Below are positions 7,097 through 34,846 of a stretch of DNA of 64,000 nt, piece by piece; position 1 is the stretch's first letter, and each line of letters begins with the position of its first letter. Location of the stretch: positions 63,116,001 through 63,180,000 of the forward strand of contig NC_043007.1 in NCBI RefSeq assembly GCF_006345805.1, written 5' to 3'. The notes under the pieces are model-generated. The model searched no databases and had not been told where the DNA came from. It was given only the letters and a program-made list of their open reading frames with translations. A program made the position numbers and the translations under genes. Source of the stretch: Octopus sinensis. Taxonomy: Eukaryota.

Positions 7097-7234
<138 letters not shown>

Positions 7235-14615: not shown

Positions 14616-14771
<156 letters not shown>

Positions 14772-15048
14772 TTAAAATTTCCCAGTCTACCCATCATTTC
14801 AACTCGCCACATATTTCAAGATATCATGAATAAATAAAACAAAAAATATTGAAAAGTTAAACAAAATTTACAGAACTTCCTTTCAAATGGCTTGCATTTA
14901 TTTTTAATTTGTATTAATGTGTGGTGTATTTGTTTTGTTTTTGTTCTTCTTTTATCTTTTACTTGTTTCAGTCACTAGACTGCAGCCATGCATGGACATT
15001 GCCTTGAAGAATTTTTAGTCGAATGAATTGAGCCCAGTATTTTTTAAG

Positions 15049-15108
15049 CCTATCAAGCTGTCCAACCCATGCCAGCATGGAAAATAGTCGTTAAAGGATG
15101 ATGATGAT

Positions 15109-15163
<55 letters not shown>

Positions 15164-15175
15164 TCTCTCTCTCTT

Positions 15176-15213
<38 letters not shown>

Positions 15214-15291
15214 ACAACAGAATTCTTTCAGTATCTGTCAAGCAAATCCACTCACAAGGCTTTAGTTACTTACCCCAAAATTGCCAAACCA
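15049..15291 (+). repeat. Copy 2 of the local direct duplication, inserted within a SINE
   Basis: Same sequence as 14347-14534 with longer (CT)n/(CA)n; it interrupts a SINE between aagcct and atcg. Confidence 0.9.
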
Positions 15292-15928
15292 TCGCTTTTG
15301 CCAAACTGCTAAGTTGCAGGGACATAAACACACCAACACCAGTTGCCAAGCAACAGAGGGGAAACAAACACAGACACACACAGATATATGCATATATATA
15401 TATATATGTAAAAATATAAAATTAATTAAATGTCCATAAATTAATATATATTCTTCAATTACTTTTATTAATCCCTTGGTTTAAAACTTATTCTAGTTAG
15501 GTTCATACACTACATACCCTACAACTAATTCATACTCATTATGATACAACTTCTTTCCTGAGCGTCCAATAATACTATATTTGTTCCACGTCCTCGCGTT
15601 GTTGTGTTTTTTTGTGCTTTCTTGTTTGGATTAACTTTATATATATATAACTAATTTAGAGACAAACCACCATTCCACAACTCAGTCAACCATGCTTTGT
15701 GACATATACCATACACAATACTAATCTAAAATTTTAATAATATATAATATTGAACAGTAAGATTATTGCAATCATATAATATATAAGAGCAAATACTTTT
15801 AAAATCACATCAAATACCATACAAAGATACATTCATCATAAAAATATTAATCTAAAATCAAATAAAGTATAAACTGAACAATAAAAATTAATACAATAAT
15901 ATAATGTATAAAAGTAAGTACTTGTACA

Positions 15929-16047
15929 TCGACTACACATGTTTCATGGCTGCATTAGGACTATATAAAATCATATTAGCAGCCATATCCAAGTTCATTA
16001 GAACAGAAAAGTGTTTTACTCCCAAAAGTAGTCACTCCTCAGGTCAA
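15929..16047 (-). ncRNA. Type I hammerhead ribozyme motif (sense within EGLN1 intron 1)
   Basis: UUGAC-CUGAGGA-GUGACU..long loop..AGCCAU-GAAA-C-AUGU-GUA-GUCGA. Stem I is 5 bp (one G.U), stem II is 6 bp (one mismatch, one G.U), and minimal stem III contains the palindrome ACAUGU; predicted cleavage after GUA (plus 15934-15936). Confidence 0.7.
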
Positions 16048-16866
16048 ATTCCTAAAAAAAACCCCCTAAAAACTAAAAGTTTAACTTACCTCATAATATG
16101 ATAAGGAATATAAAAAATAAGGAATAAAATTATATATATAAAGAAATAAAACCTGTAATGTAATCCCTAAGTTAAAGACATTAATATTATTAAAAGTTAT
16201 GAACTAAAATATTCAAATAGAGTATTATTGTGAACATGATTAATTCATTAAGGAGAAGGTAAATAAATGTAAATACGTGTTAGTGTATAAAGTTAATAAA
16301 CAACATATGTTGATACTGTTTAGAATAAATTTTTAAAAAAATTTTAAAAACATGACTTATCTGCCAGTGAATCACTGTAGATTGAACCAAAATAAGTGTA
16401 TTTGAACATTTATACTGAAAAGTCCATTACTCAGAGATAAATACGTATTATACTTACTATAATAATAACGAAATTATCGAAAAATAAGGTCTACCTAAAG
16501 TATATTGTTTAGTGAAGATTTAAAATACTTAAAACCTTTAGATCTACGAAAAATAATAACTATAACACGTACGAAATTTATGTATTACATAAATAATGCT
16601 ATAAAACATTGTAAGAATGCACATATTATCGTCGAATTTTTTATTAGTAAAAAGATAGTTATTTATTTTAATTATATATAATTAAGTAATATTTAAAGTG
16701 TATTCTAAGCTAATTATATGTATTTAACGCTACTAATCATAACTATTGTGGAATGGTGGTTCATCTCTAAATTAGTTATATACATATATTATATATTACG
16801 AAATTCAGTCTAATATTATTATACTGAATTTTACCTGTAAGGTTGGAATAATAATTTATTCCCTAA

Positions 16867-16926
<60 letters not shown>

Positions 16927-17053
16927 AGAGAGAAACCACTATTTAGTTATTCCATCAATAGTGAAAAGATATTATCTATAATAACCACATAGAAATTAAT
17001 TAAATATCTTATAATTATTATTCTAAAATTCCCATAACAAATCAAACATTAAA

Positions 17054-17149
17054 TTGACTACGCGTGTTTCATGACTAAATATATAAATCAACAATATTAA
17101 AATTTAATATTAATTCAATTTTAAAATATTTAGCCACTCTTCAGGTCAA
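17054..17149 (-). ncRNA. Type I hammerhead ribozyme motif (sense within EGLN1 intron 1)
   Basis: UUGAC-CUGAAGA-GUGGCUAAAUA..UAUUUAGUCAU-GAAA-C-ACGC-GUA-GUCAA. Perfect 5-bp stem I, 11-bp stem II (two G.U), intact core, and a minimal stem III containing the palindrome ACGCGU. Confidence 0.8.
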
Positions 17150-18499
17150 AAAGATAACATAAATAAATTCAGATATTATAATAAAACAATAAATATATAA
17201 ATATATGTATATTAACAGTAAATAATTCAATGAAATTTAACAATATTAATGTAAAGCAATTTCATATTGATGAAAACCAGTTAAAAGAAATTTTAAACTT
17301 TAAACTTACAATATAGCGTTGTAAAAAAAAACCTATCTCGTTAAACATGACGTAAACAATAAATATACAATAAATAAATATATATATGTATTTAACGATA
17401 AAAATTAAAATAATCAAAAACATGACATAATATACCATTTACGGGGGAAAATTCTAAAATTCTCAATAATTTAAAACTATGACTTTATATGTAAAAATAT
17501 ATGATTAATTAAATGTCCATAAATTAATATATATTCTTCAATTACTTTTATTAATCCCTTGGTTTAAAACTTATTCTAGTTATGTTCATACACTACATAC
17601 CCTACAACTAATTTATACTCATTATGATACAACATAATATAACTACATAAATTAATAAATTAATAACATAAATCAGGTTATATATATTCACAAATTATCT
17701 AAACTTATTATATAAGTAATTTGACCTATGTCTATATTTAATTTTCCTCTCATCTTGGAAATTAATCAATTGTTTTTTAGATCGTAATATCTCCAAAAAT
17801 TCATTTGTACATAGTAAACAAAAATCATTACCTATTTGATCAAATTTAGCTTCACAAACTATCTCCCATTTTAAATTATACTTAATTCCTTTATATTTCA
17901 ATTCCTATATATATTTGCTAAGGCTAGTAGAATTAATCAATGGGTTTCTTTCCGTTTCTGTGAACCAAATCCACTCACAAGGCTTTGGTCTGCTTGAGGC
18001 TATAGTAGAACACATTTGCCCAAGGTGTCACACAGTGGGACTGAATCTGGAATCATGTGGTTGGGAAGCAACTTGTTGAGTGTTTTATATATTTTCACAG
18101 ATTTTAGATATTTGCATGTGAATTGTTATAACAAGTGTGTCATAGATAGTTGAATATCACTTCTAGTACTAAGCACTCAAACACAAAGTAGAGATTGTCA
18201 CCAAATGCAAACGTAGATAATGATTGTAGCAAAGTTTAGGTACTTGACTGCAAGATCAGTGGATCAACACACTGTAAAATAATGGTCAACGTTGCTTTTG
18301 CTGGTTCATGCATAAATATTACATTATACATTTTTTTTAAGTATATGAAAAGAAATGTTAAAACTAATTTTTAAAGGCTCATAATCAAATTTAACCTTTT
18401 AGCATTCAAACTTCTTTGTCAAGCATATTGCTTATTTATTCATATTGTTTTGAATTAATTACGCATTATCTCGTAACTTCAAGATTTCAATAGTTATCA

Positions 18500-19840
18500 T
18501 CTTCATCATTATCATCATTCAACGTCCACCTTCCATGTTTGCATGGGTTGGACAGTTTGACAGGACCTGGCCAGACAGGAACCTGCACCAGACTACTGTA
18601 TCTGTTTTGGCATGGTTTTTACTGCTGGATGTCCTTCCTAACAACAAACACCCAGCAGGGTGGACACGCACAGTAGAGCAAATGATTATAAGTATCATCA
18701 TGATTTAATGCCCACCTTCCTTGCAGGCAAGCCAAAGGGCTGCACCAAGCTCCACTGTCAGCTTTGACGTGGTTTTTACAGCCAGATGCCCTTCCTAATG
18801 CCAACCACTTTACAGAGTGGACTGGGTGCATTTTACATGATACTAGCAAGGTCACCATATAACTTGCAAGACAAAAATTTCTCAACTGAGACAGGCAGTG
18901 ATATTGAAGGAAGTGGCTTTGTACCATGTGAAGAGAAGTTAAACTACAATAGAAGGACAGAAACAGTGTCTTGCCATAGAGGAAGTACATGGTTACCCCA
19001 GTTGGAGTGAATGAGAGAGACGGATGGTGGTGATATGTCAGGGAATACTCTGAAGATATAAGGATGTGAATAGAAATGGAATGGTAGAGGATTGCTCAAT
19101 AGAAAAAGCAACTGGACCAACAGGTACAGTGACTGAAATGCTGAATGTACCAGGTAGAAGGGTAGATTGTGTGCATCATCAATCAGATAGTTGCTATAGC
19201 AGTATTATTAACTTCTACAAAAGTAAAAGGAAATATAAGAGAGAGAGATGATATTATGATACCATATATTTGATTGATCAAGTATCAATATGAATTAGGA
19301 CAGAATTAAAAACCATATTAAGAAAAATATTTCCAAAATACATAATCATAGAGTTCAAAAGATTTTCAAAGTCAGAATTTCACTCTAAACACCAACAAGG
19401 TAGATTGCAACAAGGTCCAGTGGTTTCAATTCACACAGATTGAAATTATTGCATTAGAGCAACACAATGAACTTATTGCATTAGAGCAATGGTTCTTACC
19501 AAACTAGAGCGAGCTGGTTTATACAAACATCTACCTGCAGTTTTCTGGAGAATAAGTCAAGCTAGGAACATATTCAATTTAAATCACTACAGCAAACCAT
19601 CAGTTTGATTTAGGATTGTTTATGTGATTGCAAGAGTTACAGTGCAACTGAGTAAGAACAGAATTAATTTAGATAAGACGATTTGACTTGGTCCAATGAA
19701 AAAGATACTATTAATGTCCTCTTGTTGGTGAAACAACTGCAGGAGAAATATTAGCTAAAAGTAAACTGTTCTACCTTGCATATATTGACCTGGAGAAGGC
19801 TTTTGATAGTTTCATGATATATTATGTGGTGAGTGTTAAG
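18500..19840. mobile_element. RTE-tail/SINE fragments (minus, ~18500-19020) and a degenerate RTE RT fragment (plus, ~19630-19840)
   Basis: Tail motif gatgcccttcctaatgccaaccac. LLVKQLQEKYLAKSKLFYLAYIDLEKAFD matches the RT region of 38745-41100. Confidence 0.65.
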
Positions 19841-21856
19841 TGTGATTGTTTATTTTTAGAATGACATTAAAAGGTAAGTGTGAGTGGTTGGATCTGGTTA
19901 GTTTTAACATAAAACAGATAGAATGTATGAGCCAGATGTGGCTGAATTAAATGCTAAAGGGTTCATTTTAGTACTAAGACAGGTTGAAGGAAAATATTTA
20001 AAACTTGATAAGCAATTTATCTCACATGTAGATATAACATAGTCAAACATCAATTGTTTGCATTTTCTGCTATTTGTAAATATCAGCAAAATCCAGTATC
20101 AAGTGATTAGATCTGTTTCACAGGAGGAAGGAAATTACCATTTGTAATATTCACATTTTCTAGAGACTAAGGCAGCAAGCTGATAGAATCGTTAGCACAC
20201 CCACCAGGTAAAATTTTTAGCGGAATGTCATCTGTCTTTACATTCCAGGTTCAAATTCCACTCAGCTTGACCTTGTCTTTCATCCTTTCAGGGTCAATAA
20301 AATAAGTACCAGTTGACCAAACCCCTCCCAAAAAATTGCTGGCTTTTTGCTAAAAATTTGAAGCTAATATTCATGTTTTCTAAAGAGGATTAGTAACATA
20401 AATGAAATGACATGGTTTAAAATTGGGTATCAAGAGGCTTGAAGCCATTCCTAAAGTATAGTGTTAATAGTCAATTATACACACACACACACACACACAC
20501 ATTTGTATATGTATATATATTAATACAAAGCATTGATCCCCAAGTATGACTTTTGCTGCCCTTACACATAAGCACAGGCATGGGTGTGTGGTTAAGAAGT
20601 TCACCTTACAGTCACATGATGTTAGGTTCAGTCCCACTGGATGATACCTTGGGTAAGCATCTACTATACCCCTGAAGTCAATCAATGCTTTGTGAGTGAA
20701 TTTGATTGATGGTAATATTAAATTTGTGTTCATCACTACCAGGACATAAATTAAGATATTTACTTAATCTCTTATCTTTTACTCATTTCAGTCATGAGAC
20801 TGTGGCTATGCTGGGGCACCACTTTGAAGTATTTTAGTCAAGCATATCAACCTTAATACTTCTTTTTTGAAGCCTGGTACTTATTCTATCAGTCTCTTTT
20901 ACCAAACCACTAAGTTACAGTGATGTAAACACACCAACACCAGTCATTAAGCAGTGGTGGGGGACAAACACAGACACAAAGGAAAACACACACACATATA
21001 TAGAGTGGGCTTCGTTCAGTTTCCATCAATCAGATCCACACACAAGGCTTTGGTCTGTCTGAGGTTATAGTAGAAAACACTTTCCCAAAGTGCCATGCAG
21101 TGGGACTTGAACCCAGAACCCTGTGGTTAGGAAGCAAACTTCTTACCACACAGTCACATCTGTAGAAATATTAAGAGCAACTATGAAAGGAAAATCATAA
21201 ATAGCTAGGGTTATTGAACCTAAGGGTTTCAAATATGCAACACCACTATTGGCATGGTGAACTTCTTGTACAACATTATAAGGTTTTCAATATCATTTGT
21301 GGTAGCAGATTGGTGTGAAGAGGGCAAGAGAAAGAAAAAGAGAAAACTTGGTGATAGCTGATAGTTTATAGCACTAAGAGTAAATCTTTTTAAATAATAT
21401 ATATTTATGGTAAAATAACAAACATGTCCATAAGTGACAGAGATTCCTTAGTTTTAATCCCAGGTTCAGTAATTCTAAGTAGATAAGAGATGAATCTTAC
21501 CCCTCCTGGGTAAGAAACATATGAGTTTGAGCTCTCTCAAGGATTCAAGCTATAAATATAAACAGCACCAGAGTTAGGTTGTATCCTTTATTAAATTGCA
21601 TTGTTTTAACTTAGCTGGAAATAGGTGCTCCTACAATTTATCCAATTTTCTTCATTTATTTAAGTGTTGTTGTTTTATCTTTTAAAGCAGAATTTTTTCT
21701 TTCTCTCTCTCTTTTTTAATAGCAAATAAATATTGAAAATCAGGTTCTTCAATTCGAAATAGTCGCAACTACTGGGCATTTGGTTGAAGCCAAAATTATG
21801 CTTGACATGGAACATTATTAAGAATTTTTACCTTTGATTTGATAATCCTACATGTT

Positions 21857-21918
<62 letters not shown>

Positions 21919-21949
21919 GTTTTTATATATATATATACAGTTTCCATTA

Positions 21950-22780
21950 CTTAGGGTGTTCTGAAAGTATAGCTGCCAGAATAAGAACAAGCTGGGAAAA
22001 GTTCAGAGAGCTACTCCCTCTGTTGATAAAAAAGGACCTCTCCTTCAGCAGGCTGGTTGTATGATGCCTGTGTATAAACAGCTATGCTGCATGGCAGTGG
22101 GGCATGGGCTGTGACTACTGAGGACATGCAAAGACTTGAAAGAAATGAAACCAATATGCTCTGTTCAATGAGTAATGTCAGTGTGCTTATATGACAGAAT
22201 GTAAGTGATTTGAGAGAAAAATTGGATATACAAGGCATCAGATATAGTGTGCAAGAAAGAAGATTGTGCTGGTACAGTCATGTAGTGCATATGATTGAAG
22301 ACAGTTGCACCAAGAGGTGGCAATCTCTAATTTTGGAGGGAACATGTAGAAGGAGTAGACAGAGGAAGATGTAGGATGAAATGCTGAGAAAGGATCTTCA
22401 GATGCTGGAACTCACAGAGTGAATGACAGGGAACCGAGACTTCTGCACTTTGCTGTGGTTGAGAAGACATGTCAAGCTAAGTAAAATCATGATTGTCCTT
22501 GCATACAGGCATGTCCTCCGCATCCCTCTTCTTTTGAGTATTCCTAATCTTGCAGGTTGATGGGTACCGGTGCCATGTAAAATACACCCTTACTGGTACC
22601 ACGTAAAAGCACCCATGCCAGTGCTGTGTAAAAGCACCCAGTACATTCTGTAAAGTGGTTGATGTTAGGAAGGGCATCCAACTGTAGAAACAGACATACA
22701 GCCTGAGTAGCTCTTCAGCTAACCAGTTCCTGTCAAACTGCCCAATCCATACCAGCATGGACATTAAATGATGATTATAT
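21950..22780 (+). mobile_element. RTE LINE 3' portion
   Basis: GCSESIAARIRTSWEKFRELLPLL...; collinear with the 3' part of 38745-41100 and ends in gatgattat. Confidence 0.8.
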
Positions 22781-23140
22781 ATATATATATATATCGGATG
22801 TTAAACGATGATGATGATATATATATATATAACCCAAACCAGCATGGAAAGTAGATGCTGACTGATGATGATGATGGAATTTTTTTCCCAAATAAATTGC
22901 AATTCATATTCAAGGCTCCAATGAAGTTCTAAGGTGTTATTCAGGCGCTCAAATAGGAGTCCACTGCATCTTGTAGCAGAAACAGCTGTAACCTAATGAA
23001 GTTCATAAGCTAATCATTTATTCCTTTGACATTATATTTTCTTATTACTATTTTATACTTGCCTAACACTTCGTTCTGAAGTATACAGATATTGAGTTCT
23101 ACACCTGGTTATTAGTCTCACAATGCTTAAAGGAAATAGC

Positions 23141-23294
23141 AGTGGCTGTGTCGTACGTAGTTTGCTTACCAACCACATGGTTCCAAGTTCAGTCCCACTG
23201 CGTGGCACCATGGACAAGTGTCTTTTACTATAGCCTTGGGCCAACCAAAGCTTTGTGAGTGGATTTGGTAAATGGAAACTGAAAGAAGCCCATC

Positions 23295-23354
<60 letters not shown>

Positions 23355-23560
23355 TTGTGAGTGAATGTTTGTCCCCCCCAACATCGCTTGACAACAGATG
23401 GTGGTGTGTTTATGTCCCCATAACTTAGCAGTTTGGCAAAAGAGACTGATAGAATAAGTACTAAGTTTACAAAGAATAAGTGCTGGGGTCAATCTGTTTG
23501 ACTAAAGGCAGTGCTCCAGCATGGCTGCAGTCAAATGACTGAAACGAATAAAAGAATATA
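23141..23560 (+). mobile_element. Full-length tRNA-derived CORE-like SINE with internal (TG)n
   Basis: Head ggttccaagttcagtcccactgcgtggcacc...gacaagtgtctt, tail gactgaaacgaataaaagaata. Confidence 0.8.
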
Positions 23561-23740
23561 TATATATATATGTATGTATATATGTATTCATACATTTAAA
23601 CTAGGAAGGGCATCCAGCCGTAGAAACACTGCCAGATTTGACTGGGCCTGATGAAGCCTTCTGGCTTCACAGACCCCAGTAGAACCGTCCAACCCATGCT
23701 AGCATGGAAAACGGACGCTAAATGATGATGATGATGATGA

Positions 23741-23781
<41 letters not shown>

Positions 23782-24489
23782 CAAAATAAGAAAATGGAGA
23801 AATACATCGAAATCAAATATCAATTACCAGATTATGAATTTGTGGTAAAACATTTTACCTTTGCCCATATAATACAATAAATGAATTAATTGTATCGCAA
23901 TTCTTAACATTTATGTATTAACTTTGTTGGGTACTTCACTAGCAGTATATTGGATATATGTTATTCCATGGAGGATTGCATTTACAACCCCTATCTCAAT
24001 TTGTGTATATATATATATATATATATCCGCACATATACATAGAATTGATGATTGCCGCATCTTATCAAATGACAGCCATCTCATATTCAGCCAGATTTTT
24101 CTGATTTACTTTCATCTTTGCATGTGCATAGACATGGCTTTTCAGTACAGCCAATGATTGACATGGTACTAGACAGGCGATAAACGTGATCTTGTGTCTG
24201 CACAGGATTAATTTCATTAGTTGTGGCTGATGTTGGTGATAAACCAGGACTGGTCTTGCATGCCTTGTTGCAGACTGGACAAGTAGTGGGGCCTAATGAT
24301 TCTCATGGGCCTTCAGGTGATTTACATAGTCACATAGCCTGATTTACAGAGAAGGACACATTGGTAAAGATTACTGTTCCAGTTATCTGTATTACTAGTG
24401 TCTGCTAGCTCTCCTTTTCTTAGAATTCTCTTTAGTTTAGCATACATCGCTCTTCCTTTATCCAACATTTTACATACTGACATAGTTCT

Positions 24490-24720
24490 CCAATTACATA
24501 CATATGTATACATATACACACACACATATATATAACATAGATATAAACATACGTATATGTACATACATACATATATATATATACATGCATATATATATAA
24601 ATATATATATATATGTACATACATATATACACATACATATATACACCTGCTTATATATATATATGTACATACATATATATACACACACATATATATGTAC
24701 ACACACACACAAGCATATAT
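24490..24720. repeat. Compound (TA)/(TACA)/(CA) microsatellite
   Basis: Seen directly; source of several spurious ORFs. Confidence 0.95.
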
Positions 24721-24721
24721 A

Positions 24722-25567
24722 CAGGGTGCAATGGGTAAATTGTTACCATTTTATATTTTTAATTTCATGTATGCACATTGTTTGGTTTTGATTTTTGTCA
24801 ACTACACGGTATAGTAGGGTCAGCTGGGCACTGTCTGTGAGAAAAACAGCACCGTGACACAGTTCACTCTGCCAGAAATTTGGAAACTACATGCTGTACT
24901 GCTTGGCATTCATGCCAGAAGCTCCAATACGAACATTTCAGAGTGTTTGGGTGTCAATCTGAGGACATGCACCGAGAGTTATAAAAATCAAACATCCAGT
25001 CAACATCATGGTGTTTGGAGTGATCACTAGTGATGGCAACGTTATGCCTCCATTCTTCTTCCCACACAACCTTAGACTCAACATGGAGACCTACATCAAG
25101 TGCCTGGAGGAGGTAGTACTGCCTCCGGTCAAGAGAGTGGCTGCTGGAAAACTCTATGTCTGGAAACAGGACTCTGCACCATGCCACACAAGTAAGAGAA
25201 CCCAGTCTGGCTGTCAGACAATTTCTGCGACCACATCACCCCTAACATCTGGCCACCCAGAATGCAACTCTCTTGATTAATATGTGTGGGATGCAGTTGA
25301 GTGAGAGACCAACAAAACTCCTCGTAACACCAAAGATGAACTGAAGGCAAGGATTATGACGGCATTCACCACTTAAGCAAGGAGACCATCCGGAAGAGTT
25401 GCCGGAGATTCTGAAGTTGTCTGGAGGCTGTGGTTGAAGCCAATGGCAATTTTATTGAGTAAATTTACTCTTTGGTATTTATGTAATTTAGGTAAATATA
25501 TCTGTTAAAATGAGACATCAGTATCATTTTCATTTTTGCATAATTTAGATGACAATTTATTCATTAC

Positions 25568-25573
<6 letters not shown>
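24722..25573 (+). mobile_element. Internally deleted maT/DD37D-type Tc1-mariner element with both TIRs
   Basis: Imperfect ~26-bp TIRs CAGGGTGCAATGGGTAAATTGTTACC and (rc) TAGGGTGTAATGAATAAATTGTCATC, with TA flanks. Transposase fragment MVFGVITSDGNVMPP...YVWKQDSAPCHTSKRTQ...IWPP. Confidence 0.85.
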
Positions 25574-25663
<90 letters not shown>

Positions 25664-25836
25664 CACACATATATATGTAGATATATATACATACATACAT
25701 ATACATACATATATATATATATATACAAACACATATACACATACATACATGCATAGATATGCATGCATACACATACATACATACATACATAAATACATAC
25801 ACATACATGCATACATACATATATACATACATATAC
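25574..25836. repeat. Compound (TA)/(TG)/(TACA) microsatellite
   Basis: Seen directly. Confidence 0.95.
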
Positions 25837-26110
25837 AAGGTGTCCACAAAAACACTCCCTGATTTCATGGTGTTATGATATTTAAAAAGTTCAAATATAT
25901 TGATAAACATGTTGTAAACTGATTCTCTAACAACAGTTATTTCAATTTTTCCAGGTGATTAGATATCTTTGACCTGAAAACTACAGGGGTGCAAGGATAT
26001 CTAAAAATGGCTACCACCCCACAGCAATGCAGCTAATGTGTACTGGAATCTGCAAGATCAAACAGTGTTGTGGCTGTGCAACATGCTTTCAGACTCAAGT
26101 ATCATACGAA
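25837..26110 (+). mobile_element. 5' fragment of a mariner/Tc1-type element
   Basis: TIR-like caaggtgtccacaaaaa and an N-terminal HTH-like MATTPQQ..CVLE.ARSNSVVAVQHAFRLKY. Confidence 0.55.
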
Positions 26111-26189
26111 ATGGTGGATTTTGAAAAATTATAACATGTAAACACAAGGCATGTTCTGTATCACCTTGTCTTTATATGTTAATCTTGGC

Positions 26190-26264
26190 TTTCCTGCTGA
26201 TGAGAGCTTCGTCTTGTAAATTATTTTATTTGGTGAAGATAGCTTGAAACCATGGTACAGGAAA
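26190..26264 (+). ncRNA. Type I hammerhead ribozyme motif (antisense to EGLN1)
   Basis: UUUCCUG-CUGAUGA-GAGCU..AGCUU-GAAA-C-CAUG-GUA-CAGGAAA. Perfect 7-bp stem I, canonical CUGAUGA, 5-bp stem II, and palindromic stem III ACCAUGGU; predicted cleavage after 26257. Confidence 0.82.
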
Positions 26265-27386
26265 TGTAAATGTTTTTATTTTTCATTCCCTTTTGAAATT
26301 ACCCCTAATAGTTGTTTGGAGTTTAACTACTCTTTCTAGCAGGTTAGATGTCCTGTTATGGCCATCTCTTATGTGTTTAAATGTACACTGAATTTTTATA
26401 TGAATAATATATTGTCTATTGACTAGTTTTTTCTTCTTGCTAGACCACTGGTAGCAAAGAAATTTTCTAAATTTTTTTTGCTACCCTGGAATTTGTTATT
26501 AATTAGATATGTATCTCAGATATATTCAAATAAAACACTATTCACTTATCCATAAGTACTTTCTTTGGCCCTTCCATCAGTAAGGACTACCCACTACCAG
26601 ACTATTCATGTCTGAAATATTCTTATATTGATATTTGAATTTGTATTATCTATATTTTAATTTTATTTTTATACTTTTGTTTTACTGGTCTTGGAATTCA
26701 GTGATAGCCCTAACGGACTTGAACAACACCATTGTTTTTAAATATTAGCTGACCAATTAGGTTGTAAGATTGACTCTGCCCCATCCTTACATATGGGGGT
26801 TTGGGGATTAGGTTTCAGTCAAGAAGTAATTAATATTAGCATCGCATTTAGGCTTCACCCAATTTTCTTTCATAATGGGTTTAATCTAAGTTATTTCTGC
26901 CAACTCCATTTATAATGCTATATCTAGTAAATAGCAGTTAGCATCTAACCTTTAACCACTGTAACATGGACCAAACCATTAAACTCACCACATAACATAC
27001 TACCCTTGCTATTTCCCCCAGTACAATGGAAACATGATTTAAACCACAGCCTGCAGAAATTTTCTTGAGTGTGACTTTATTCATCTACTTACCACAGGAT
27101 GGAATACCATGGATTATATTAACACCTTAACTGAAGTCCTTACTTTACCTTTCCTTACTATGTCTATCACATTATTTTATTTTACCCAACTCTATCTGAC
27201 TTGCACACATTAGTTCCCTAACAATCGGACCCTCCAAAGAAGCCTATTATCCAAATCCTGTCCAATGTCTGTTCATCCTTGTATATCACCGACGTGATGA
27301 AGATAACTTGGAAGTTTTTCTTGCCTCATGGTAGAAACGGTCATAAGGGATTAGTACCTGTACACTCATCTATTATTATTCATTTG

Positions 27387-27424
<38 letters not shown>

Positions 27425-27529
27425 TAGCAGAAATACTCATTATTGACTGGGTTCAGAAAGAGCCTTAAAAAATTATACCCTGATTTATGAAAGTTACTGC
27501 TTCGATATTATTGAATGTTTTGTACCGAA

Positions 27530-27561
<32 letters not shown>

Positions 27562-28559
27562 CAGGGAAAAAATAAGTTCAAAAGAGAACAATTCAAACTT
27601 TTTGAGAAGTCCAAAAAGAGAGCAAGAATGATTTCTAATAAAGATTCATCATATTTATAAAAAACAGCCAGAGAAAGTAATAAGCATATGAAAATAGTAG
27701 TTGGAAAATATCGTTATAGGTATAAATATACCATAAAAAAATTATAGAAAAATAGAGAAGAAAAAGATGTTGCATCAAAATTAGATTTAATACAAAATAG
27801 GATTCAATACATATGTGTGTTTCAAAGGACAATACAAATATGTAAGAATAAATTTATAACCATAGTAATTATAATTAAATTTATGTGTTGTCATTTTTAT
27901 CAGTGTGAGGAATTTTTGTAAGGACATCAAAAAAGGTTTAATAAAATAAAGTAAATTAAAATAAGATACAATAAGGGGGGATACAAATAGGGTAATAGGA
28001 AAAAAATCTGGTATTTACAAGCAAGTTGTAAAAGGGTAAAAAATAACAGTAATAATTAATAGTAAGAGAGACGAAAGAAAAAAAAAAGACATATCAATGT
28101 GTATGCACATCTAAATGTGAAGTAAACTATAACGTAAAAATAAGAATAAAAATCTAACAGTTATGTTTTAAAAAATGGTAACAAGTCAAGACAAAGTATA
28201 ATAAACAGGGCCATGTGTGTATAGTAGAATATAATGTAACAGGTGGACAAGTAGAAAAAAACCATTGAGAGTTATACGTATATATATTGAAAAACGAAAA
28301 AATATATTTTACATGAGGCTAAAAGTGATAGGCAAGACTGTGTTTGAAAAAAGTTACAATATTTAAGTAAAAATGTACATGCAAGCAGAGAAAACCAAAG
28401 AGAACTTAACAAGGAAAAAACATCGATCACAGACAAGACTGGCCAGTGTATTCAAGATAGCTACCTTACTCAAAAACTAGCCTGGGGTAGGGGAGACAAT
28501 CAGAAAAATTTGGAAAAAAAAAATGAAAATATGAAGGACAAAATTATTATAAAATTACA

Positions 28560-30990
28560 AGTGATGGGCCACCACTCAGGCCCATCTTGTGGCCTTGATT
28601 CCCTCACAACCCACTGCACAAAGCCTAGTCCTGACAATGCAACCAATGTGTCTGGCTTCGAGGTGCTGGTTTAACACCAGTCTCTTGGCCTTCACCTGAG
28701 CTGCAGAGCCAGTTTTCATTGCTTCCTCTAAATCCTTAACAAAAACTGATTCCCTCCTAGCCTCTCTAGCCACTAAACCTGTGTTATATCTAATAAACTC
28801 AAATTTAATGACTCGCTTGAGGGCATACCACCATTTATTATTAATAATGGAACAGGTTAATGCCCTCTAAATCAACAACTTAATCCGGTCTCTGCACTCC
28901 TTAATTGCCAAAAGGGACGTATTAAGTTTCCAGACCATTTTATGATCACTGTAGCTGACTGGGTGTAACTGTGGACACCTAGCTATATTTCTATCTGCTT
29001 TTCTAATTAACACTCTATCTAGGTATGACCTAGAAGATCCGTCGCTATTTGACCAGGTCCACAATGGAGTGTTCGGAAATTCCAACCTATAAGGATCTGC
29101 TAGCTCAAAGTGGCTTAGCAGTTCCAGGAAGCAAGGATTACTTTTTCTATCTGTACACAAGCCAACATAATCTACATGTGCCTTGCAGATTGTGTTATAG
29201 TCTCCTAGCACAACTAAAGAATGTGATGTACCAAGAAACTTTTCCAGATTCCGAAAATATTCGCTTTGCCCAGTTGGTGTGGGTGCATAAATTGCAACCA
29301 GTCTGATAACTTTACCACGGCTGAATGTCAAGTCCATGATGACCAGGCTACCTTCTGGATCTGAAAAAATTAACTTTTTCCAAATTACGCAACCTGATGT
29401 AATTAAGGAAGCAACCTTGCTTCCAACCTGACACCAGGCCATGCACATTTATACAGCCTACATGAATGGGTGACACTACTTACCTCCGGTCAATGGTTCA
29501 AGGAGGAATCTCCTTCCTCTATTTCCTTTCTCTTGGGCTCGTGAGGCTTTTTATACATAGACCCTCATAAATGTAAGGGCAATAGTCCATCCTGAGAGGA
29601 CCTACATCATGAAAAAGTTCGAACTTTATCTGTCCGTAATCCTTCCAGCCTATCCTGTAAATAAAAAAGTCTTTTGATGTGATATTCTCTATCCATTTGG
29701 CTGATGAAATGACTGCCAAACGGTTAATGAGTCTATTATTTGAGACATTAATAGCCATATAATGTCATTGTTATTATTATTTTTTCGTTCTTTTTTTTTA
29801 AAGCTCAGTTTGGAAGATGTGGTCTGTATTGTTGTTTTCTTCTGCTTTTTAATTACAGATGACCACCCCTCCTTTTTGTCTTCGTCCTTTTCTTTTCTCT
29901 CCTCCTCTTGTTCAGGTGTCGTTTCATTTGGTGTTGTATCTGTAGTAGTTTCTTCTGCTTCTTTGTCTTCACGCAAGGGGCTCATACAGAGGCCCTCTTG
30001 TTGCACCTTCTTTGCAGGTTTACATTCGGTCCTTATATGGCCTTTCAATCCGCAGTTGAAGCATCTGGGCGATCATCCTTCTACGACAACGATAAGTCTT
30101 TCTTCTTTCCAGGTTATTACTTCTGGAATTTCTTCCAGTGTGGGGACTTCTGCTTGGATGAGCATGTTTAGAACTTGTCCCTTCCAGTTAACTTCCTCTA
30201 CCACTGTTGCCTGGGAGATGGTAATTTTTTTCCTCCAGGTCCATTATTATTGCCACCACTAGCCAGGCAGCATCTAATTCAGGAGGAATATTTGTTATTC
30301 TAACTTTTGATGTTCTTCTTCCCATATATATGGGGAGAAGAACCACCTCCTCACTTCGTAACATTTCTGAGTGCCGCCTGGCTACTTCCTCAGATATAAA
30401 TCTCACTTCCACTGTTCCAAATTTTTTTCCTCGTTAAAAATGATATATCTGACCATATTGGTCTAAGACATTTTTCCTCTATTCTATCGATTTTTTTCTT
30501 TTCCACATAATAGGTCTTATATATGATTCATTTTTTTCTACTTCTTCCAATGTTTCTTTGGGAGGGAACGCTTGTATTTCTGTCCCCTCCCTCTTTAACA
30601 TTGCCATGAATTGTTCCAAGTTTTTCTTGCCTGTATTTACTGTTATTTCCTTCTTACCAGCTGCCGCCGTGAAGTTCAGCAGTTTTGGCGACACCGCCGG
30701 TGAGACTTCACCTGTCAAAACAGGCATATTCAAAATTACTGGTGAGTCTTCTGGTAACGCCATAGTTTTGTTTTGTCAAACACAAGGCTAAACGCCAAAC
30801 ACACAAACTAAATTTGGACTTACGTCCCACAGAAATGGCTCAAAGCCACACAGTTCAGCAATAATTTCCTCACAGGGGCTAACTGACAACAAGTCACTTC
30901 AGCAAAGCAATAAACAGTTCTTCAACAAAATTGCAAAACCACAGCAACTCACCGTAACAATGTACAATCCCACAGGAAGCACTGGAAAAC
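28560..30990 (-). mobile_element. Tx1/L1-clade LINE: ORF1 (RRM-like region plus CCHC knuckle) and ORF2 APE endonuclease, lacking RT
   Basis: ORF1 from ATG 30763 with CFNCGLKGHIRTEC at 30022-30063. ORF2 VGCINVHGL, IRLVAIYAP, VLGDYN, WTWSN, SYLDRVL, YSDHKMV. Interrupted by stops and frameshifts. Confidence 0.88.
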
Positions 30991-31304
30991 TGTTCACACA
31001 ACAAGAGACTAAGAAAATGTCAGCCACTCGAAAAAATTAAGACATTGTGCTTACCAACCTTTATAGTTATCTAATATTATCTAATTAGCATATAATCAGA
31101 AGACTATGGTAATGGTATGTGCTAAGTTCAACCCAGACTAACCCATTATTGCACTTTTAATTTTATTCCCATGTTTTTATGACATTAGTTATTTAAGTTC
31201 AAATCATACCTATTACACTATTGCAAGTATTGTTAACACTAGCAATCTCAAAATAAAGCAGTGTATTTTATACACACACACACACATACATATATATATA
31301 TATT

Positions 31305-32525
31305 GGAATTTATGAAAAAAAACAAAAAAAGACGACAATGGGTGTGTAAACAACAAACAGATGTATTAGTTTAATGCTCAGGATGTGAGGAAGTCTTTTA
31401 CATTTCGAGCCTATGCCCTTCAATAGAAAGGAACACAGAAATAAACAGAGGGAGAAAATAAAAAAGGTTTAGTGGCTAGTGATCAGTCGTGGCGAATGCC
31501 AGACAGAGGTAGTCAGACAGTAGAGCTGGGAAGAAGGGGAGATAAGAAAAGTAGTGGTGATCCCAAAACGAAGGTGCGCATGCGTGAGAGCATGTATGTG
31601 CATGTGGATAGGAGCTGGTGACCTTGATGTGTGCGTGTATGTATATGTAGGTGTGTGGATGATGGTGTGGGTACTGGGAAGCGGTCAGTGCTAGTGTGTG
31701 CAGGGTGGTGTGATGTGGTGTGGTGGTGTAGTGTTGGGGTGTGGAGGATGCTAGTCTGGGGTGTGGGTGGGTGTAGGGTATGTGGGAGTGGGTGTGAGGG
31801 TGGGTGGGGTATGTGGGAGTGGAATGTGTAGGATGAGGTGGGAGTGGGATGGGATGGGAAGTGTTCTGCGAACCGGTCAACCAAGCAGCGTCCCATTTGA
31901 CCAATGTACAGAGAAAGCAGGAGATGCAGTAGATGACATTGCTAGAAGTGTAGGTAAAGGCATCAGTGATATGATAGGATCAATGATGGGTGCCGGTGAG
32001 GATGGTGGTATTGGAGACGTAAGAGCAAGTGCGGCAGCGTGAGCAGGAGCAGGGGAACGAGCCAGGCTGGGAGGTTGGATTAGGGAAGAAACTGTGGACC
32101 AGGAAGTCATGTAGGTTGTGGGCTCATTTGAAGGAAGGGAGGGGTCAGTTAGGGAAGATGTGCGAAGTGAAGGAGTCAGACAGAAGTTGCCGGAAGGCTC
32201 AGAGAATGGTACATTGGAGAGGTAGGGTGGAGGGATGATAGGTGAGGGGAAACAGGAGATGGCGTGGCAAGTGAGGGGGAGATAGAGCAGACGCACAGTC
32301 CACAGAACGTGTTCTGGCAAGGGTGGTGTGGATAGTGGTGAGGGGATATCCACGTAGGATTAAGTGGCGAATCATGAGTTGAGACTGAGCCTCAAAGTCA
32401 TGGTTGCTACTGCAGAGCCTGTACAAATGGAGGAATTGGGAATAGGGGATGGAGAGCTTGGTGTGTTTAGAGTGGGAAGAGCACTGTGTGTTTGTAGTGG
32501 ATGGAGGTGGTGAGAATGGACTGAT
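31305..32525 (-). mobile_element. 5'-truncated Penelope-like (Neptune-type) element: RT thumb, GIY-YIG and pLTR
   Basis: SIHYKHT..SSHSKHTKLSIPYSQFLHLYRLCS...RGYP, FPLTYHP, SNVIYCISC, GRCLVDRFAEH. The 3' pLTR with a degenerate hammerhead ends in (TA)n and is homologous to 58623-58805. Confidence 0.85.
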
Positions 32526-32529
32526 GAAA

Positions 32530-33560
32530 AAGACCATCTCTTGTGAAGAAAGTACCCCCCCCCCCCAGCATAGACTAGTTATTAGTGACTTTAGACTCAA
32601 GGCCAGAAGGATGCCAAAAAGCAGACCAATCTGGAAAAGAAAGACTTGGAAGCTTAAGAACCCTTCACATGGTCAGAGATTTAGGGATATCCTTACTGAA
32701 AAATTTGATGATAGGGAGGAGCTACAGTCCTGTGACATAGAAGGCAGCTGTGAATTCCTGCGAGACAGCTTGCTGAGCACCACAGACCAAATCTGTGGCT
32801 GGTGCAAAGTCCCTTCCAGACCTAAGGTAACAAGGTAGTGGAACAATACTTGAGACAGGGCCATTAGAGCAAAGAACCAGGCTTGGAATGCCTGGAAGAG
32901 TTGGGGTAGCAAGAGAATGTATCATATAGCCAAAAGGGAAGCTAGGAGACAGGTATATAAAGCCAAGGGAGTAGGAGAAAAGAAGTTTGCCAATGTTCAG
33001 CAATGTTAGGACCAAAGAACTGAAGTATTTCAGATTGCAAGACAGTGTGTGAGAGAAAACCATGATGTCATAGGAGAGAAATGTGTCCGCATGGATGGTG
33101 CCCTTGTGCTTAATGATTCTGCAAAGAAAGAGGTTTGGAGATGCCATTATGAAAGACTGCTGAATGTGGAGAATGAATGGGAGGAGGAGAGTCTGCCAAA
33201 GATTGACCCAATTGAGGGACCATCTACCTGAATCAACAGTACCCTAGTAGATAAAGCAATTAAGGATATGAAGACAGGGAAAGTACCTAGCCCATCAGGA
33301 ATCACCGCTGAGATGCTTAAAATATCGGGCAGTGTGGGTTATGGTCTTGTCACCCGCATTGTAAATCAGGTAGTTTATGAAAGAGTGGTGTAGCAGCACC
33401 CAATGACTGGTGTAGCAGCACCAGAGTCAACTGCTACAAAGGTAAAGGTGATGCTTTAGATAGAAATAACTAAAGTGGTATCAAATTAATGGATCAGGTG
33501 ATCCATGAAAGTTACAAAGAGGGTCATAGTCCAACTAATTAGGACAACTAGATGAGATCG
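32530..33560 (+). mobile_element. RTE LINE middle fragment (APE end, linker, RT start)
   Basis: QHRLVISDF, KEVWRCHYERLLNVENEW and VDKAIKDMKTGKVPSPSGITAEMLK, homologous to 38745-39200. Confidence 0.85.
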
Positions 33561-33678
33561 CAGCCATGGCTGATGCCAGTGTGCATGCCTGGCCTATTTA
33601 AGAGTACCCTTGATGCATCAGGCGATATGATATGCTTGAGAAGACCTGTTGAGTCAAGTAAAACCAAAATCGTAGCAG

Positions 33679-34806: not shown

Positions 34807-34846
<40 letters not shown>

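What the first reader, a model, noticed from the sequence alone, without database searches (positions are those of the whole stretch)
17054..17149. Intact hammerhead in the sense strand of the oxygen-sensor gene's first intron
Seen: on the minus strand (the EGLN1 pre-mRNA strand) all conserved core nucleotides are present with a perfect stem I (UUGAC/GUCAA) and an 11-bp stem II. It lies ~550 nt 3' of a GIY-YIG C-terminal remnant and ~2.3 kb before the exon 2 acceptor. Inference: every EGLN1 primary transcript contains this motif, so co-transcriptional self-cleavage could lower PHD2 output or affect splicing of the 20.4-kb intron, perhaps together with the second sense motif ~1 kb away.
Basis: partly seen in the sequence, partly recalled or inferred. 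Interest (0 to 1): 0.72.

Follow-up and report, generated by a model that had tools for sequence, protein, structure and literature searches.

The report
Retrotransposon hammerhead motif inside octopus EGLN1 intron
The hammerhead ribozyme motif is real, but it is the standard cargo of a truncated Penelope-like retrotransposon that landed in a TA-repeat in intron 1 of the octopus oxygen-sensor gene, and nothing found here suggests that it regulates that gene.

Summary
On the minus strand, 17149-17054 carries a complete type-I hammerhead core, a perfect 5-bp helix I and a 12-bp helix II. It lies in the sense strand of the 20,427-nt intron 1 of an EGLN1/PHD2 gene. The window is Octopus sinensis. 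A descriptor scan expects 0.04 such motifs per 64 kb and finds two.

The motif is not gene-specific. 546 nt upstream on the same strand lies the 5'-truncated C-terminus of a GIY-YIG endonuclease. [quoted passage not shown] In 5 of 5 relatives' loci a hammerhead-like motif follows the endonuclease stop codon on the same strand.

The 2.5-kb AT-rich composite abuts (TA)n. It is present and near-identical in O. vulgaris. It is undecidable in O. bimaculoides, where an assembly gap sits at the site. Argonauta has no comparable large intron.

Efficient cleavage looks unlikely. Helix III is only 2 bp, there is a G.U at 10.1/11.1, no loop-loop contacts are recognisable, and the partner motif (16047-15929) is degenerate.

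Verdict: a new member of a known kind, of low interest. Regulation of EGLN1 remains an untested, improbable possibility.

The parts
17054..17149 (-). HHR1, a type-I hammerhead motif. Helix I 17149-17145 / 17058-17054. Core CUGAAGA 17144-17138. Helix II 17137-17126 / 17082-17071 with an AU-rich extension between the strands. GAA 17070-17068. Helix III 17067-17066 / 17061-17060 with loop ACGC. H17 = A at 17059. Predicted scissile bond between 17059 and 17058.
   Evidence: Sequence. Descriptor hit against 0.043 expected. Fold: helix I pair probability 0.85-0.93, helix II about 1.0, helix III 0.02; z = -2.45.
15929..16047 (-). HHR2, a degenerate paralogue of HHR1. It shares UUUGACCUGArGAGUGrCUA and CAUGAAACAyGyGUAGUCrA with HHR1. 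About 50 nt separate the core from the stable hairpin AUGGCUGC..GCAGCCAU, and the core nucleotides are sequestered in the minimum-free-energy (MFE) fold. The equivalent cleavage site would be 15934/15933.
   Evidence: Alignment. Fuzzy 20-mer search finds only these two copies in 64 kb. Fails the descriptor. Folds.
17692..17946 (-). 5'-truncated C-terminal remnant of a PLE GIY-YIG endonuclease ORF, covering about the last 85 codons. It has an in-frame TAG replacing a conserved W at 17907-17905 and a stop codon at 17697-17695. It retains CLLC (CxxC), the E and the N; the CxH motif is mutated to YRH.
   Evidence: HMMER hits P0001-P0008. tblastn E down to 2.6e-14 over 17946-17692. Alignment A3. 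Profile search gives 38 relatives. No Pfam hit for the remnant itself.
17486..17633 (-). repA, a 148-nt direct repeat between the endonuclease stop codon and HHR1.
   Evidence: 97% identical to 15403-15550, with sharp borders.
15403..15550 (-). repA', the second copy of the 148-nt repeat. It forms the 3' edge of the composite and abuts (TA)n at 15392-15407.
   Evidence: Collinearity with O. bimaculoides resumes at 15407.
16921..16940 (-). Putative element 3' terminus GGTGGTTTnTCTCTAAATTA, directly followed by (TA)n at 16891-16922, 114 nt 3' of HHR1. Further copies lie at 15652-15671 (-, 258 nt 3' of HHR2) and, inverted, at 16755-16774 (+).
   Evidence: Fuzzy search finds these three copies only, all inside the element and each followed by TA-rich sequence. 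(TA)n runs. That this is a terminus is an inference.
15403..17946 (-). The whole 2,544-nt AT-rich (21.8% GC) composite insertion. It holds partial direct and inverted PLE-derived pieces, in the sense orientation relative to EGLN1.
   Evidence: Flanks are collinear with O. bimaculoides up to 17947 and from 15407. Present at 99.6% identity in O. vulgaris. Composition.
14742..35168 (-). Intron 1 of EGLN1/PHD2 (20,427 nt). Exon 1 is 36059-35169 (zf-MYND) and exon 2 is 14741-14622 (2OG-FeII_Oxy_3).
   Evidence: Pfam. tblastn of annotated octopus EGLN1 proteins. Splice sites.

Best explanation
[quoted passage not shown] A 5'-truncated copy, together with further partial direct and inverted pieces typical of PLE insertions, integrated into a (TA)n microsatellite in intron 1 of EGLN1. 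It sits in the same orientation as the gene, in an ancestor of O. sinensis and O. vulgaris.

In the life of the transposon the motif is thought to self-cleave tandem or read-through transcripts, probably as a dimer. That role is hypothesised in the literature and not shown. In its present place the motif is a passenger in the pre-mRNA. It is predicted to cleave poorly, if at all, and to have little or no effect on PHD2 output.

Shown here: the motif, its excess over chance, its paralogue, the endonuclease remnant and its clade features, the endonuclease-to-hammerhead association in relatives, the (TA)n borders, and the presence in two species.

Inferred: that the endonuclease remnant and HHR1 belong to one insertion, the low activity, and the neutrality.
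For: The motif is real and non-random.

The endonuclease remnant at 17946-17692 is on the same strand, 546 nt upstream. Its relatives carry CxCX5C, VVY..YIG without internal cysteines, then CxxC..E..N..CxH. That is the description of Hydra-clade ENs (endonucleases) in PMC8557442, section 11. The same paper states that canonical HHRs are readily detected in this clade and that almost all its families insert into (TA)n.

L008 shows the full layout: (TA)n | RT with YRDD | thumb, linker and EN | hammerhead 92 nt after the stop codon | (TA)n. L001 has the EN fused to a PLE thumb, matching a canonical PLE ORF with E = 2e-7.

A hammerhead-like motif lies on the same strand 53-820 nt after the EN stop codon in 5 of 5 loci. 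The background for the automated relaxed descriptor is about 0.01 per 10 kb. Two loci were found by that descriptor and three by manual parsing.

U at position 11.1 ('AUGAAAC' or 'GUGAAAC') is shared with L007, L008 and L009.

The borders of the window's insertion abut (TA)n, and the orthologous O. bimaculoides site is (TA)n.

O. sinensis and O. vulgaris differ by 0.43% in both the element and the flank.

PMC4209133 reports that PLE hammerheads have a long helix II, a 4-5 bp helix I and a tiny palindromic helix III, act as dimers, and show low activity in vitro.
Against: The window holds no RT, so clade assignment rests on about 85 residues at 33-42% identity to unnamed proteins from unidentified sources, mostly ENA assemblies.

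The internal architecture is not resolved. The order is repA then HHR1 in one part, but HHR2 then repA' in the other, and the two units share no homology beyond the hammerhead ends. The EN fragment and HHR1 could therefore belong to separate, adjacent insertions.

Three of the five relatives' motifs (L007, L008, L009) were found by manual parsing. They have weak helices II of 2-4 bp and a U.U at 10.1/11.1.

No other genomic copies of this exact family could be retrieved, so it is unknown whether HHR1 matches its family consensus.

Low activity is predicted, not measured. The loss of helix I in native context is also seen in most control motifs, so it does not discriminate.
Confidence: 0.78

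Rival explanations
1. One reading: HHR1, alone or with HHR2, self-cleaves nascent EGLN1 pre-mRNA often enough to lower PHD2 mRNA output or disturb splicing of the 20.4-kb intron.
For: The core is intact and on the sense strand, and helices I and II are predicted in isolation. The insertion is fixed in two species. Domesticated intronic hammerheads exist in amniotes, in RECK, CTCL and DTNB (PMC6155905). Xenopus retrozymes are depleted from introns, which hints that such inserts can be costly (preprint 10.64898/2026.07.22.740005).
Against: Helix III is 2 bp with pair probability 0.02, and there is a G.U at 10.1/11.1. Helix II is too long for canonical loop1-loop2 contacts. PLE-type motifs cleave poorly in vitro (PMC4209133). 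HHR2 is degenerate. The motif is absent from the compact Argonauta gene. No constraint is detectable between O. sinensis and O. vulgaris, although the comparison has no statistical power. From general knowledge, not tested here: slow intronic ribozymes need not block splicing.
Confidence: 0.07
2. HHR1 and HHR2 pair in cis as a double hammerhead. This would release a roughly 1,125-nt RNA (17058-15934) from the intron, in the manner of a retrozyme, possibly as a circular RNA.
For: Cofolding of the two motifs gives a double-hammerhead-like MFE structure, with helices I and III formed in trans. Animal retrozymes are proposed to be non-autonomous derivatives of PLEs.
Against: The hetero-duplex helix III is weak: -6.5 kcal/mol, against -12 to -13 for perfect palindromes. 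HHR2's core and helix II are disrupted, so at most one of the two sites could be cut. The units are 1.1 kb apart and not homologous, unlike the 170-400-nt tandem repeats of animal retrozymes.
Confidence: 0.05
3. HHR1 belongs to a separate, ORF-less hammerhead-bearing element, a non-autonomous partner that ends in GGTGGTTTnTCTCTAAATTA. That element happened to insert next to an unrelated endonuclease-plus-repA fragment in the same (TA)n hotspot. The motif would still be transposon cargo, but of a different element.
For: repA ends sharply at 17486. A distinct 20-mer terminus followed by (TA)n lies after both hammerheads. repA' recurs without any endonuclease sequence upstream. (TA)n is a recurrent target for this clade.
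Against: In all five relatives' loci the endonuclease stop codon is followed by a hammerhead on the same strand within 53-820 nt. A single 5'-truncated copy spanning 17946 to 16921 is therefore the simpler reading.
Confidence: 0.2
4. The motif is a chance match in AT-rich DNA.
For: Rfam gives no hammerhead hit. The core boxes alone are not enriched in the window: 10 found against 5.5 expected.
Against: The full descriptor expects 0.043 per 64 kb and finds 2. A paralogue lies 1.1 kb away on the same strand. The motif sits next to a PLE endonuclease whose relatives all carry hammerheads. Rfam also misses the control PLE motifs.
Confidence: 0.02

Closest known systems
Hammerhead motifs of Penelope-like elements (Cervera & de la Pena 2014, PMC4209133)
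   Same: Type-I topology with an open, short (5-bp) helix I, a long helix II, and a minimal helix III with a near-palindromic sequence that implies action as a dimer. Sits next to a PLE ORF on the same strand. Scattered solo and truncated copies, with direct and inverted partial copies.
   Different: Has G.U (U.U in some relatives) instead of the highly conserved G10.1-C11.1. [quoted passage not shown] Helix II is far longer, at 12 bp plus a 43-nt AU-rich extension. The helix III sequence ACACGCGU is one change away from a perfect palindrome.
Hydra clade of C-terminal EN+ PLEs (Craig et al. 2021, PMC8557442)
   Same: The relatives of the endonuclease remnant have the CxCX5C linker, no CCHH, CxxC and CxH around the E and N residues, (TA)n targets, short elements and detectable hammerheads. 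The clade is reported from Mollusca.
   Different: The window holds only the last 85 or so codons. There is no RT, and the DKT and RWK motifs cannot be checked. The CxH motif is mutated to YRH and there is an in-frame stop codon. No named Hydra reference sequence was compared directly.
Domesticated intronic hammerheads of amniotes (HH9 in RECK, HH10 in CTCL; PMC6155905)
   Same: A type-I hammerhead in the sense strand of an intron of a protein-coding gene, of presumed retroelement origin.
   Different: The amniote motifs are conserved over hundreds of millions of years, are free of transposon flanks, and keep canonical loop-loop contacts. This one still sits in its transposon, is shown only in two sibling species, and lacks such contacts.
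Animal non-LTR retrozymes (de la Pena et al. 2020, PMC7229834; preprint 10.64898/2026.07.22.740005)
   Same: AT-rich, ORF-less DNA with two same-strand type-I hammerheads. A link to PLEs has been proposed.
   Different: Retrozymes are homologous tandem units of about 170-400 bp. Here the two motifs are 1.1 kb apart, the sequences between them are unrelated, and one motif is degenerate.

Membership tests
Hammerhead ribozyme, type I | Invariant core: C3 U4 G5 A6 N7 G8 A9, G12 A13 A14, A15.1-U16.1, and H17 not G | tested here: met
   CUGAAGA at 17144-17138, GAA at 17070-17068, A 17067 / U 17060, A 17059.
Hammerhead ribozyme, type I | Three helices around the core, with helix I open | tested here: inconclusive
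   Helix I is 5 bp (pair probability 0.85-0.93 in isolation). Helix II is 12 bp (about 1.0). Helix III is only 2 bp plus a tetraloop (0.02). A weak helix III is normal for metazoan type-I motifs that act as dimers.
Hammerhead ribozyme, type I | G10.1-C11.1 pair closing helix II | tested here: not met
   G.U wobble in HHR1 and HHR2. The same wobble occurs in two other octopus motifs. L007, L008 and L009 have U.U there.
Hammerhead ribozyme, type I | Loop1-loop2 tertiary contacts, needed for fast cleavage at physiological Mg2+ | tested here: inconclusive
   No loop 1 exists, because helix I opens after 5 bp. Loop 2 lies more than 12 bp from the core. Tertiary contacts cannot be predicted with these tools.
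Hammerhead ribozyme, type I | Score at or above the gathering threshold of an Rfam hammerhead model | tested here: not met
   No hit at gathering score or at E<=10. Control: Rfam also misses all PLE-type motifs in L001, L002 and L007-L009.
Hammerhead ribozyme, type I | Site-specific self-cleavage giving 2',3'-cyclic phosphate and 5'-OH ends | not testable with these tools
   Needs in vitro transcription or end-specific RNA sequencing.
PLE-associated hammerhead (PMC4209133) | Lies in the flanking repeat or UTR of a PLE, on the same strand as the RT-EN ORF | tested here: met
   The endonuclease remnant 17946-17692 is on the same strand, 546 nt upstream. The same layout is seen in 5 of 5 relatives' loci.
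PLE-associated hammerhead (PMC4209133) | [quoted passage not shown] | tested here: met
   12 bp and 5 bp respectively.
PLE-associated hammerhead (PMC4209133) | Palindromic 15.2-16.2 / loop 3, which allows a dimeric helix III | tested here: inconclusive
   ACACGCGU pairs with itself at 6 of 8 positions (duplex -9.1 kcal/mol). HHR2 has ACAUGUGU. Both are one change from the palindrome ACACGUGU (-12.3).
PLE-associated hammerhead (PMC4209133) | Occurs as sequence families with compensatory changes | tested here: inconclusive
   Only two copies of this family are available. Across clade-level motifs, helices I and II covary, with 96.7% of cells paired against 64.5% when shuffled. Those motifs were selected by requiring pairing, so the count is circular.
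Hydra-clade PLE (PMC8557442) | C-terminal GIY-YIG EN lacking CCHH, with a CxCX5C linker | tested here: inconclusive
   Met in the relatives: P0004, P0005, and the ORFs in L001 and L008. The window copy is truncated before this region.
Hydra-clade PLE (PMC8557442) | [quoted passage not shown] | tested here: met
   The window has CLLC..E..LIN..YRH, with C mutated to Y. The relatives have C.LC..E..LN..CRH.
Hydra-clade PLE (PMC8557442) | Insertion into (TA)n | tested here: met
   (TA)n lies at 16891-16922 and 15392-15407. The O. bimaculoides site is (TA)n. L008 is flanked by (TA)n on both sides.
Hydra-clade PLE (PMC8557442) | RT with DKT and RWK motifs, and a divergent RT4 | not tested
   There is no RT in the window. 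The relatives' RT pieces are 5'-truncated. L008 has YRDD, but the N-terminal motifs are absent.
Domesticated intronic hammerhead (HH9/HH10 type) | Conserved at the orthologous intron position across distant species | tested here: inconclusive
   Present in O. sinensis and O. vulgaris. In O. bimaculoides an assembly gap sits at the site. Not found in the compact Argonauta hians gene.
Animal non-LTR retrozyme | Homologous tandem units of about 170-400 bp, each with a type-I hammerhead | tested here: not met
   The motifs are 1,102 nt apart. There is no significant homology between the units beyond the hammerhead ends.

The most novel reading that the evidence does not exclude
A young, still transposon-embedded hammerhead in the sense strand of intron 1 cleaves a fraction of EGLN1 pre-mRNAs, or releases a roughly 1.1-kb intronic RNA together with HHR2, in the O. 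vulgaris/O. sinensis lineage. This would tune PHD2 dosage. It would be an early stage of the domestication seen in amniote intronic hammerheads, caught in an oxygen-sensing gene.
Probability: 0.05. Interest if true: 0.6.

Novelty: new member of a known kind. Interest (0 to 1): 0.2.

Why it matters
As it stands, the result is mainly an annotation. It assigns a hammerhead motif in an octopus gene to a Hydra-type Penelope-like element, and it shows that this clade in cephalopods carries hammerheads with unusually long AU-rich helix II extensions and a non-canonical 10.1/11.1 pair.

It also shows that Rfam's hammerhead models miss this whole class, which matters for genome annotation.

If the motif did cleave in vivo, it would be a natural test case of how a freshly inserted intronic ribozyme affects a dosage-sensitive gene, and of how intronic hammerheads become domesticated.

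Tried and rejected
1. Rfam at gathering score and at E<=10 gave no hammerhead. The control on relatives' loci shows that Rfam is blind to this class.

2. Pfam and a word-based protein search on the 68-aa ORF found nothing. Only exhaustive HMMER found relatives.

3. I first read the O. bimaculoides locus as an empty site. Inspection showed a run of about 994 N exactly there, so absence cannot be claimed.

4. I tried to date the insertion from repA against repA'. They differ by 2.7% (4 of 148), against 5.1-5.8% between O. sinensis and O. bimaculoides. This suggests a younger insertion, but four differences are too few to decide.

5. The constraint test between O. sinensis and O. vulgaris has no power. 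About 0.4 substitutions are expected in 96 nt and none are observed.

6. The prediction that helix I is lost once 50 nt or more of native flank is included is not specific. Most control PLE motifs behave the same way.

7. The metagenome scan for the 3' half-motif gave three chance hits, none with a CUGANGA box.

8. A unit-to-unit alignment to test for a tandem-repeat structure scored no better than shuffled sequence.

9. The 760-aa PLE ORF in L007 turned out to be an unrelated canonical PLE with DKG and CCHH, not this family.

10. The covariation count on normalised motifs is circular, because the motifs were selected by requiring pairing. It is not used as independent evidence.

Full report
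**1. What is at the coordinates**

Read on the minus strand, 17149..17054 is UUGAC CUGAAGA GUGGCUAAAUAU ... AUAUUUAGUCAU GAA AC ACGC GU A GUCAA.

- This is a type-I hammerhead with helix I open.
- Every invariant core position is present.
- Helix I is a perfect 5 bp.
- Helix II is 12 bp counting a closing G10.1.U11.1 wobble. It continues into a further AU-rich hairpin.
- Helix III is only A-U and C-G with a 4-nt loop.
- The predicted scissile bond is between A17059 and G17058.

ViennaRNA folds the isolated 96-mer into helices I and II (z = -2.45). Pair probabilities are 0.85-0.93 for helix I, about 1.0 for helix II and 0.02 for helix III.

A descriptor I wrote requires CUGANGA, helix II of at least 4 bp, GAAA, helix III of at least 2 bp, UH, and helix I of at least 4 bp. 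It finds two motifs in the window: this one and 26190-26264 on the plus strand. Markov-1 random sequences give 0.043 hits per 64 kb, and none of 300 trials gave two.

Rfam 15 reports no hammerhead, even at E<=10. It also fails on every compact PLE-type hammerhead in five control loci, so this negative result says nothing.

**2. Gene context**

The window is Octopus sinensis. It is 100% identical over 7 kb to GCA_006345805.1 CM016869.1.

The minus strand carries an EGLN1/PHD2 gene:

- Exon 1 is 36059-35169 (MYND finger).
- Exon 2 is 14741-14622 (2OG-Fe(II) oxygenase, HVDNP).
- Exons 3 and 4 begin at 7234 and 5977.
- The splice sites are GTAAGT and CAG.

Intron 1 is 20,427 nt. The motif is in its sense strand, 2,312 nt before the acceptor.

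**3. The neighbourhood is a retrotransposon**

The 68-codon ORF at 17901-17695 has no Pfam hit and no word-based match. An exhaustive HMMER search found relatives. By tblastn these match 17946-17692 with E down to 2.6e-14, reading through an in-frame TAG that replaces a conserved tryptophan.

The family (38 members by profile search) has this pattern: CxCX5C, then VVY..YIG.T..FK.R..H (a GIY-YIG core with no internal cysteines), then LS..IW.LK..G...W.I...G...CxLC..E...I....LN...E...C.H, then stop.

- In L001 the domain is fused downstream of a PLE-type RT thumb (FLDV...YRKP...S.HP). That thumb matches a canonical PLE ORF with E = 2e-7.
- In L008 an RT fragment with YRDD directly precedes the domain.

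These are the features Craig et al. list for the 'Hydra' clade of C-terminal-endonuclease PLEs:

- no CCHH motif;
- a CxCX5C linker;
- CxxC and CxH around the E and N residues;
- short elements;
- insertion into (TA)n;
- readily detected canonical hammerheads;
- hosts that include molluscs.

These points come from PMC8557442, section 11. The window copy keeps CLLC, the E and the N. Its CxH is mutated to YRH.

**4. The hammerhead goes with this endonuclease**

In all five relatives' loci that I fetched, a hammerhead-like motif lies on the same strand shortly after the endonuclease stop codon.

| Locus | Distance from stop codon | How found |
|---|---|---|
| L001 (two copies) | 123 nt each | automated descriptor |
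| L002 | 820 nt | automated descriptor |
| L007 | 133 nt | manual parse |
| L008 | 92 nt | manual parse |
| L009 | 53 nt | manual parse |
| Window | 546 nt | automated descriptor |

- The automated relaxed descriptor has a background of about 0.01 per 10 kb.
- The three manual parses have weaker helices II.
- Helix I differs in sequence in every locus but always pairs: UGGU/ACCA, GCA/UGC, GACUA/UAGUC, UAGC/GCUA, CUGU/ACAG, UUGAC/GUCAA.
- The formal pair count is high. I do not use it as independent evidence, because the motifs were selected by requiring pairing.
- L007, L008 and L009 share the 'UGAAAC' junction (U at 11.1) with the window. The non-canonical 10.1/11.1 pair is therefore probably a clade trait rather than decay.
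- (TA)n follows the hammerhead closely in L001, L002 and L008.

**5. Anatomy of the insertion**

Between 17946 and 15403 lies a 2,544-nt block of 21.8% GC, against 35.7% for the intron as a whole. In 5'-to-3' order on the minus strand it contains:

- the endonuclease remnant;
- repA (17633-17486);
- HHR1;
- a 20-mer, GGTGGTTTnTCTCTAAATTA, followed by (TA)n at 16922-16891;
- an inverted copy of that 20-mer (16755-16774, plus strand);
- HHR2 (16047-15929);
- the 20-mer again (15671-15652), followed by a short (TA)n;
- repA' (15550-15403, 97% identical to repA);
- (TA)n.

HHR2 is a paralogue of HHR1: 18 of 20 and 17 of 20 positions are identical in the two half-motifs, and these are the only such matches in the window. 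It is degenerate, however. About 50 nt separate its core from the stable hairpin, and its core is sequestered in the MFE fold.

Outside the hammerhead ends the two units are not homologous. Mixtures of partial direct and inverted copies are typical of PLE insertions (PMC8557442, Fig. 2 legend).

My preferred reading is a 5'-truncated copy spanning 17946 to 16921, plus further fragments in the same (TA)n hotspot. I cannot exclude that HHR1 belongs to a separate ORF-less element.

**6. Comparative evidence**

- **O. vulgaris** has the whole region at 97.9% identity. HHR1 and HHR2 are identical to those in O. sinensis. Substitution divergence is 0.43% in both the element and the flank. This shows no sign of constraint, but the comparison has no power.
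- **O. bimaculoides** is collinear up to 17947 and from 15407 onward (5.1-5.8% divergence). Between those points it has (TA)n, about 994 N, then (TA)n. Presence or absence is therefore undecidable.
- **Dating.** repA and repA' differ by 2.7% (4 of 148). This hints that the insertion is younger than the split from O. bimaculoides, but it does not prove it.
- **Argonauta hians** has an 8.2-kb gene in which only the exons align, and no hammerhead.

**7. How it most likely works**

In the transposon, such motifs are thought to process tandem or read-through transcripts, acting as dimers through a palindromic helix III. Measured activity of PLE motifs in vitro is low, even as dimers (PMC4209133).

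Several features here argue against efficient cleavage.

- Helix III (ACACGCGU) pairs with itself at only 6 of 8 positions (-9.1 kcal/mol). Perfect palindromes give -12 to -13.
- With HHR2 the helix III duplex is -6.5 kcal/mol.
- In a double hammerhead each site is cut by the partner's core. This follows from the established double-hammerhead topology and is an inference. The 17059/17058 site would therefore rely on HHR2's defective core.
- Helix I disappears from the predicted ensemble once 50 nt or more of native flank is added. The same is true of most control motifs, so this is a property of the class rather than a defect of this copy.

I conclude that the motif is a passenger with little or no effect on EGLN1. 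The activity claim is inferred, not measured.

**8. Comparison with known systems, and novelty**

The closest known systems are the PLE hammerheads (PMC4209133) and the Hydra-clade PLEs (PMC8557442). The idea of a gene-regulating intronic hammerhead has precedent in the amniote RECK and CTCL motifs (PMC6155905). Those are deeply conserved and stripped of transposon flanks, which this motif is not.

The finding is a new member of a known kind. Its mildly unusual traits are the very long AU-rich helix II and the G.U at 10.1/11.1. Both are shared with other octopus hammerheads seen in passing.

Interest is low (0.2). The regulatory reading stays possible at about 5%.

Noticed in passing
window 26190-26264 (+): A second strict hammerhead hit, antisense to EGLN1. 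Helix I is 7 bp (UUUCCUG/CAGGAAA), the core is CUGAUGA, there is a G10.1.U11.1 wobble, and helix III is the perfect palindrome ACCAUGGU. It is identical in O. vulgaris (L006 10886-10812, minus strand). No endonuclease remnant lies nearby.
   Followed up: partly
L003 39201-39116 (-); L006 40840-40923 (+) and 40548-40465 (-): Further octopus hammerhead motifs in the EGLN1 loci of O. bimaculoides and O. vulgaris. All have 40-50-nt AU-rich loop-2 extensions and perfectly palindromic helix III sequences (ACAGCUGU, ACAAUUGU). The O. vulgaris pair is an inverted repeat. A long helix II looks like a cephalopod-wide trait of these motifs.
   Followed up: partly
L001, L002, L007, L008, L009 (control loci): Rfam 15 hammerhead covariance models detect none of the PLE-type hammerheads, not even the compact 40-nt ones, at E<=10. 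Routine Rfam annotation would miss this class entirely.
   Followed up: yes
L003 20091-21084 (O. bimaculoides GCA_001194135.2): An assembly gap of about 994 N, flanked by (TA)n on both sides, sits exactly at the site orthologous to the insertion. This makes a presence/absence call impossible.
   Followed up: yes
window 16921-16940 (-), 15652-15671 (-), 16755-16774 (+): The 20-mer GGTGGTTTnTCTCTAAATTA, each time followed by TA-rich sequence, occurs three times and only inside the element: two direct copies and one inverted. It is probably an element 3' terminus abutting its (TA)n target.
   Followed up: partly
window 17940-18071, 21006-21107, 23162-23293 and others: A SINE-like repeat of about 130 nt, with many copies at 80-88% identity across the octopus loci. 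One copy directly abuts the 5' border of the PLE remnant.
   Followed up: no
window 718-1146 (+), 28867-29448 (-), 38942-39394 (+): Other transposon fragments: a Tc1/mariner-type DDE_3 transposase, a LINE endonuclease (Exo_endo_phos) and an RVT_1 reverse transcriptase.
   Followed up: no
L007 6229-8511 (-): An apparently intact 760-aa canonical PLE ORF (DKG, YMDD, CVVC linker, CCHH-type GIY-YIG). It lies in the same ENA contig as a Hydra-type endonuclease copy but is unrelated to it.
   Followed up: partly
window 17552, 16860, 16667, 16645, 15469 (sense strand): Five AAUAAA hexamers lie in the sense strand of the insertion, about twice the density of the intron as a whole. Premature polyadenylation would be a more conventional way for this insert to affect EGLN1 than ribozyme cleavage.
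   Followed up: no
P0052 vs P0051 (O. sinensis) and P0044 vs P0048 (O. vulgaris): The annotated EGLN1 isoforms differ only in their C-terminal exons. One O. sinensis isoform ends in a long Ala/Thr low-complexity tail. No annotated exon lies in intron 1.
   Followed up: no
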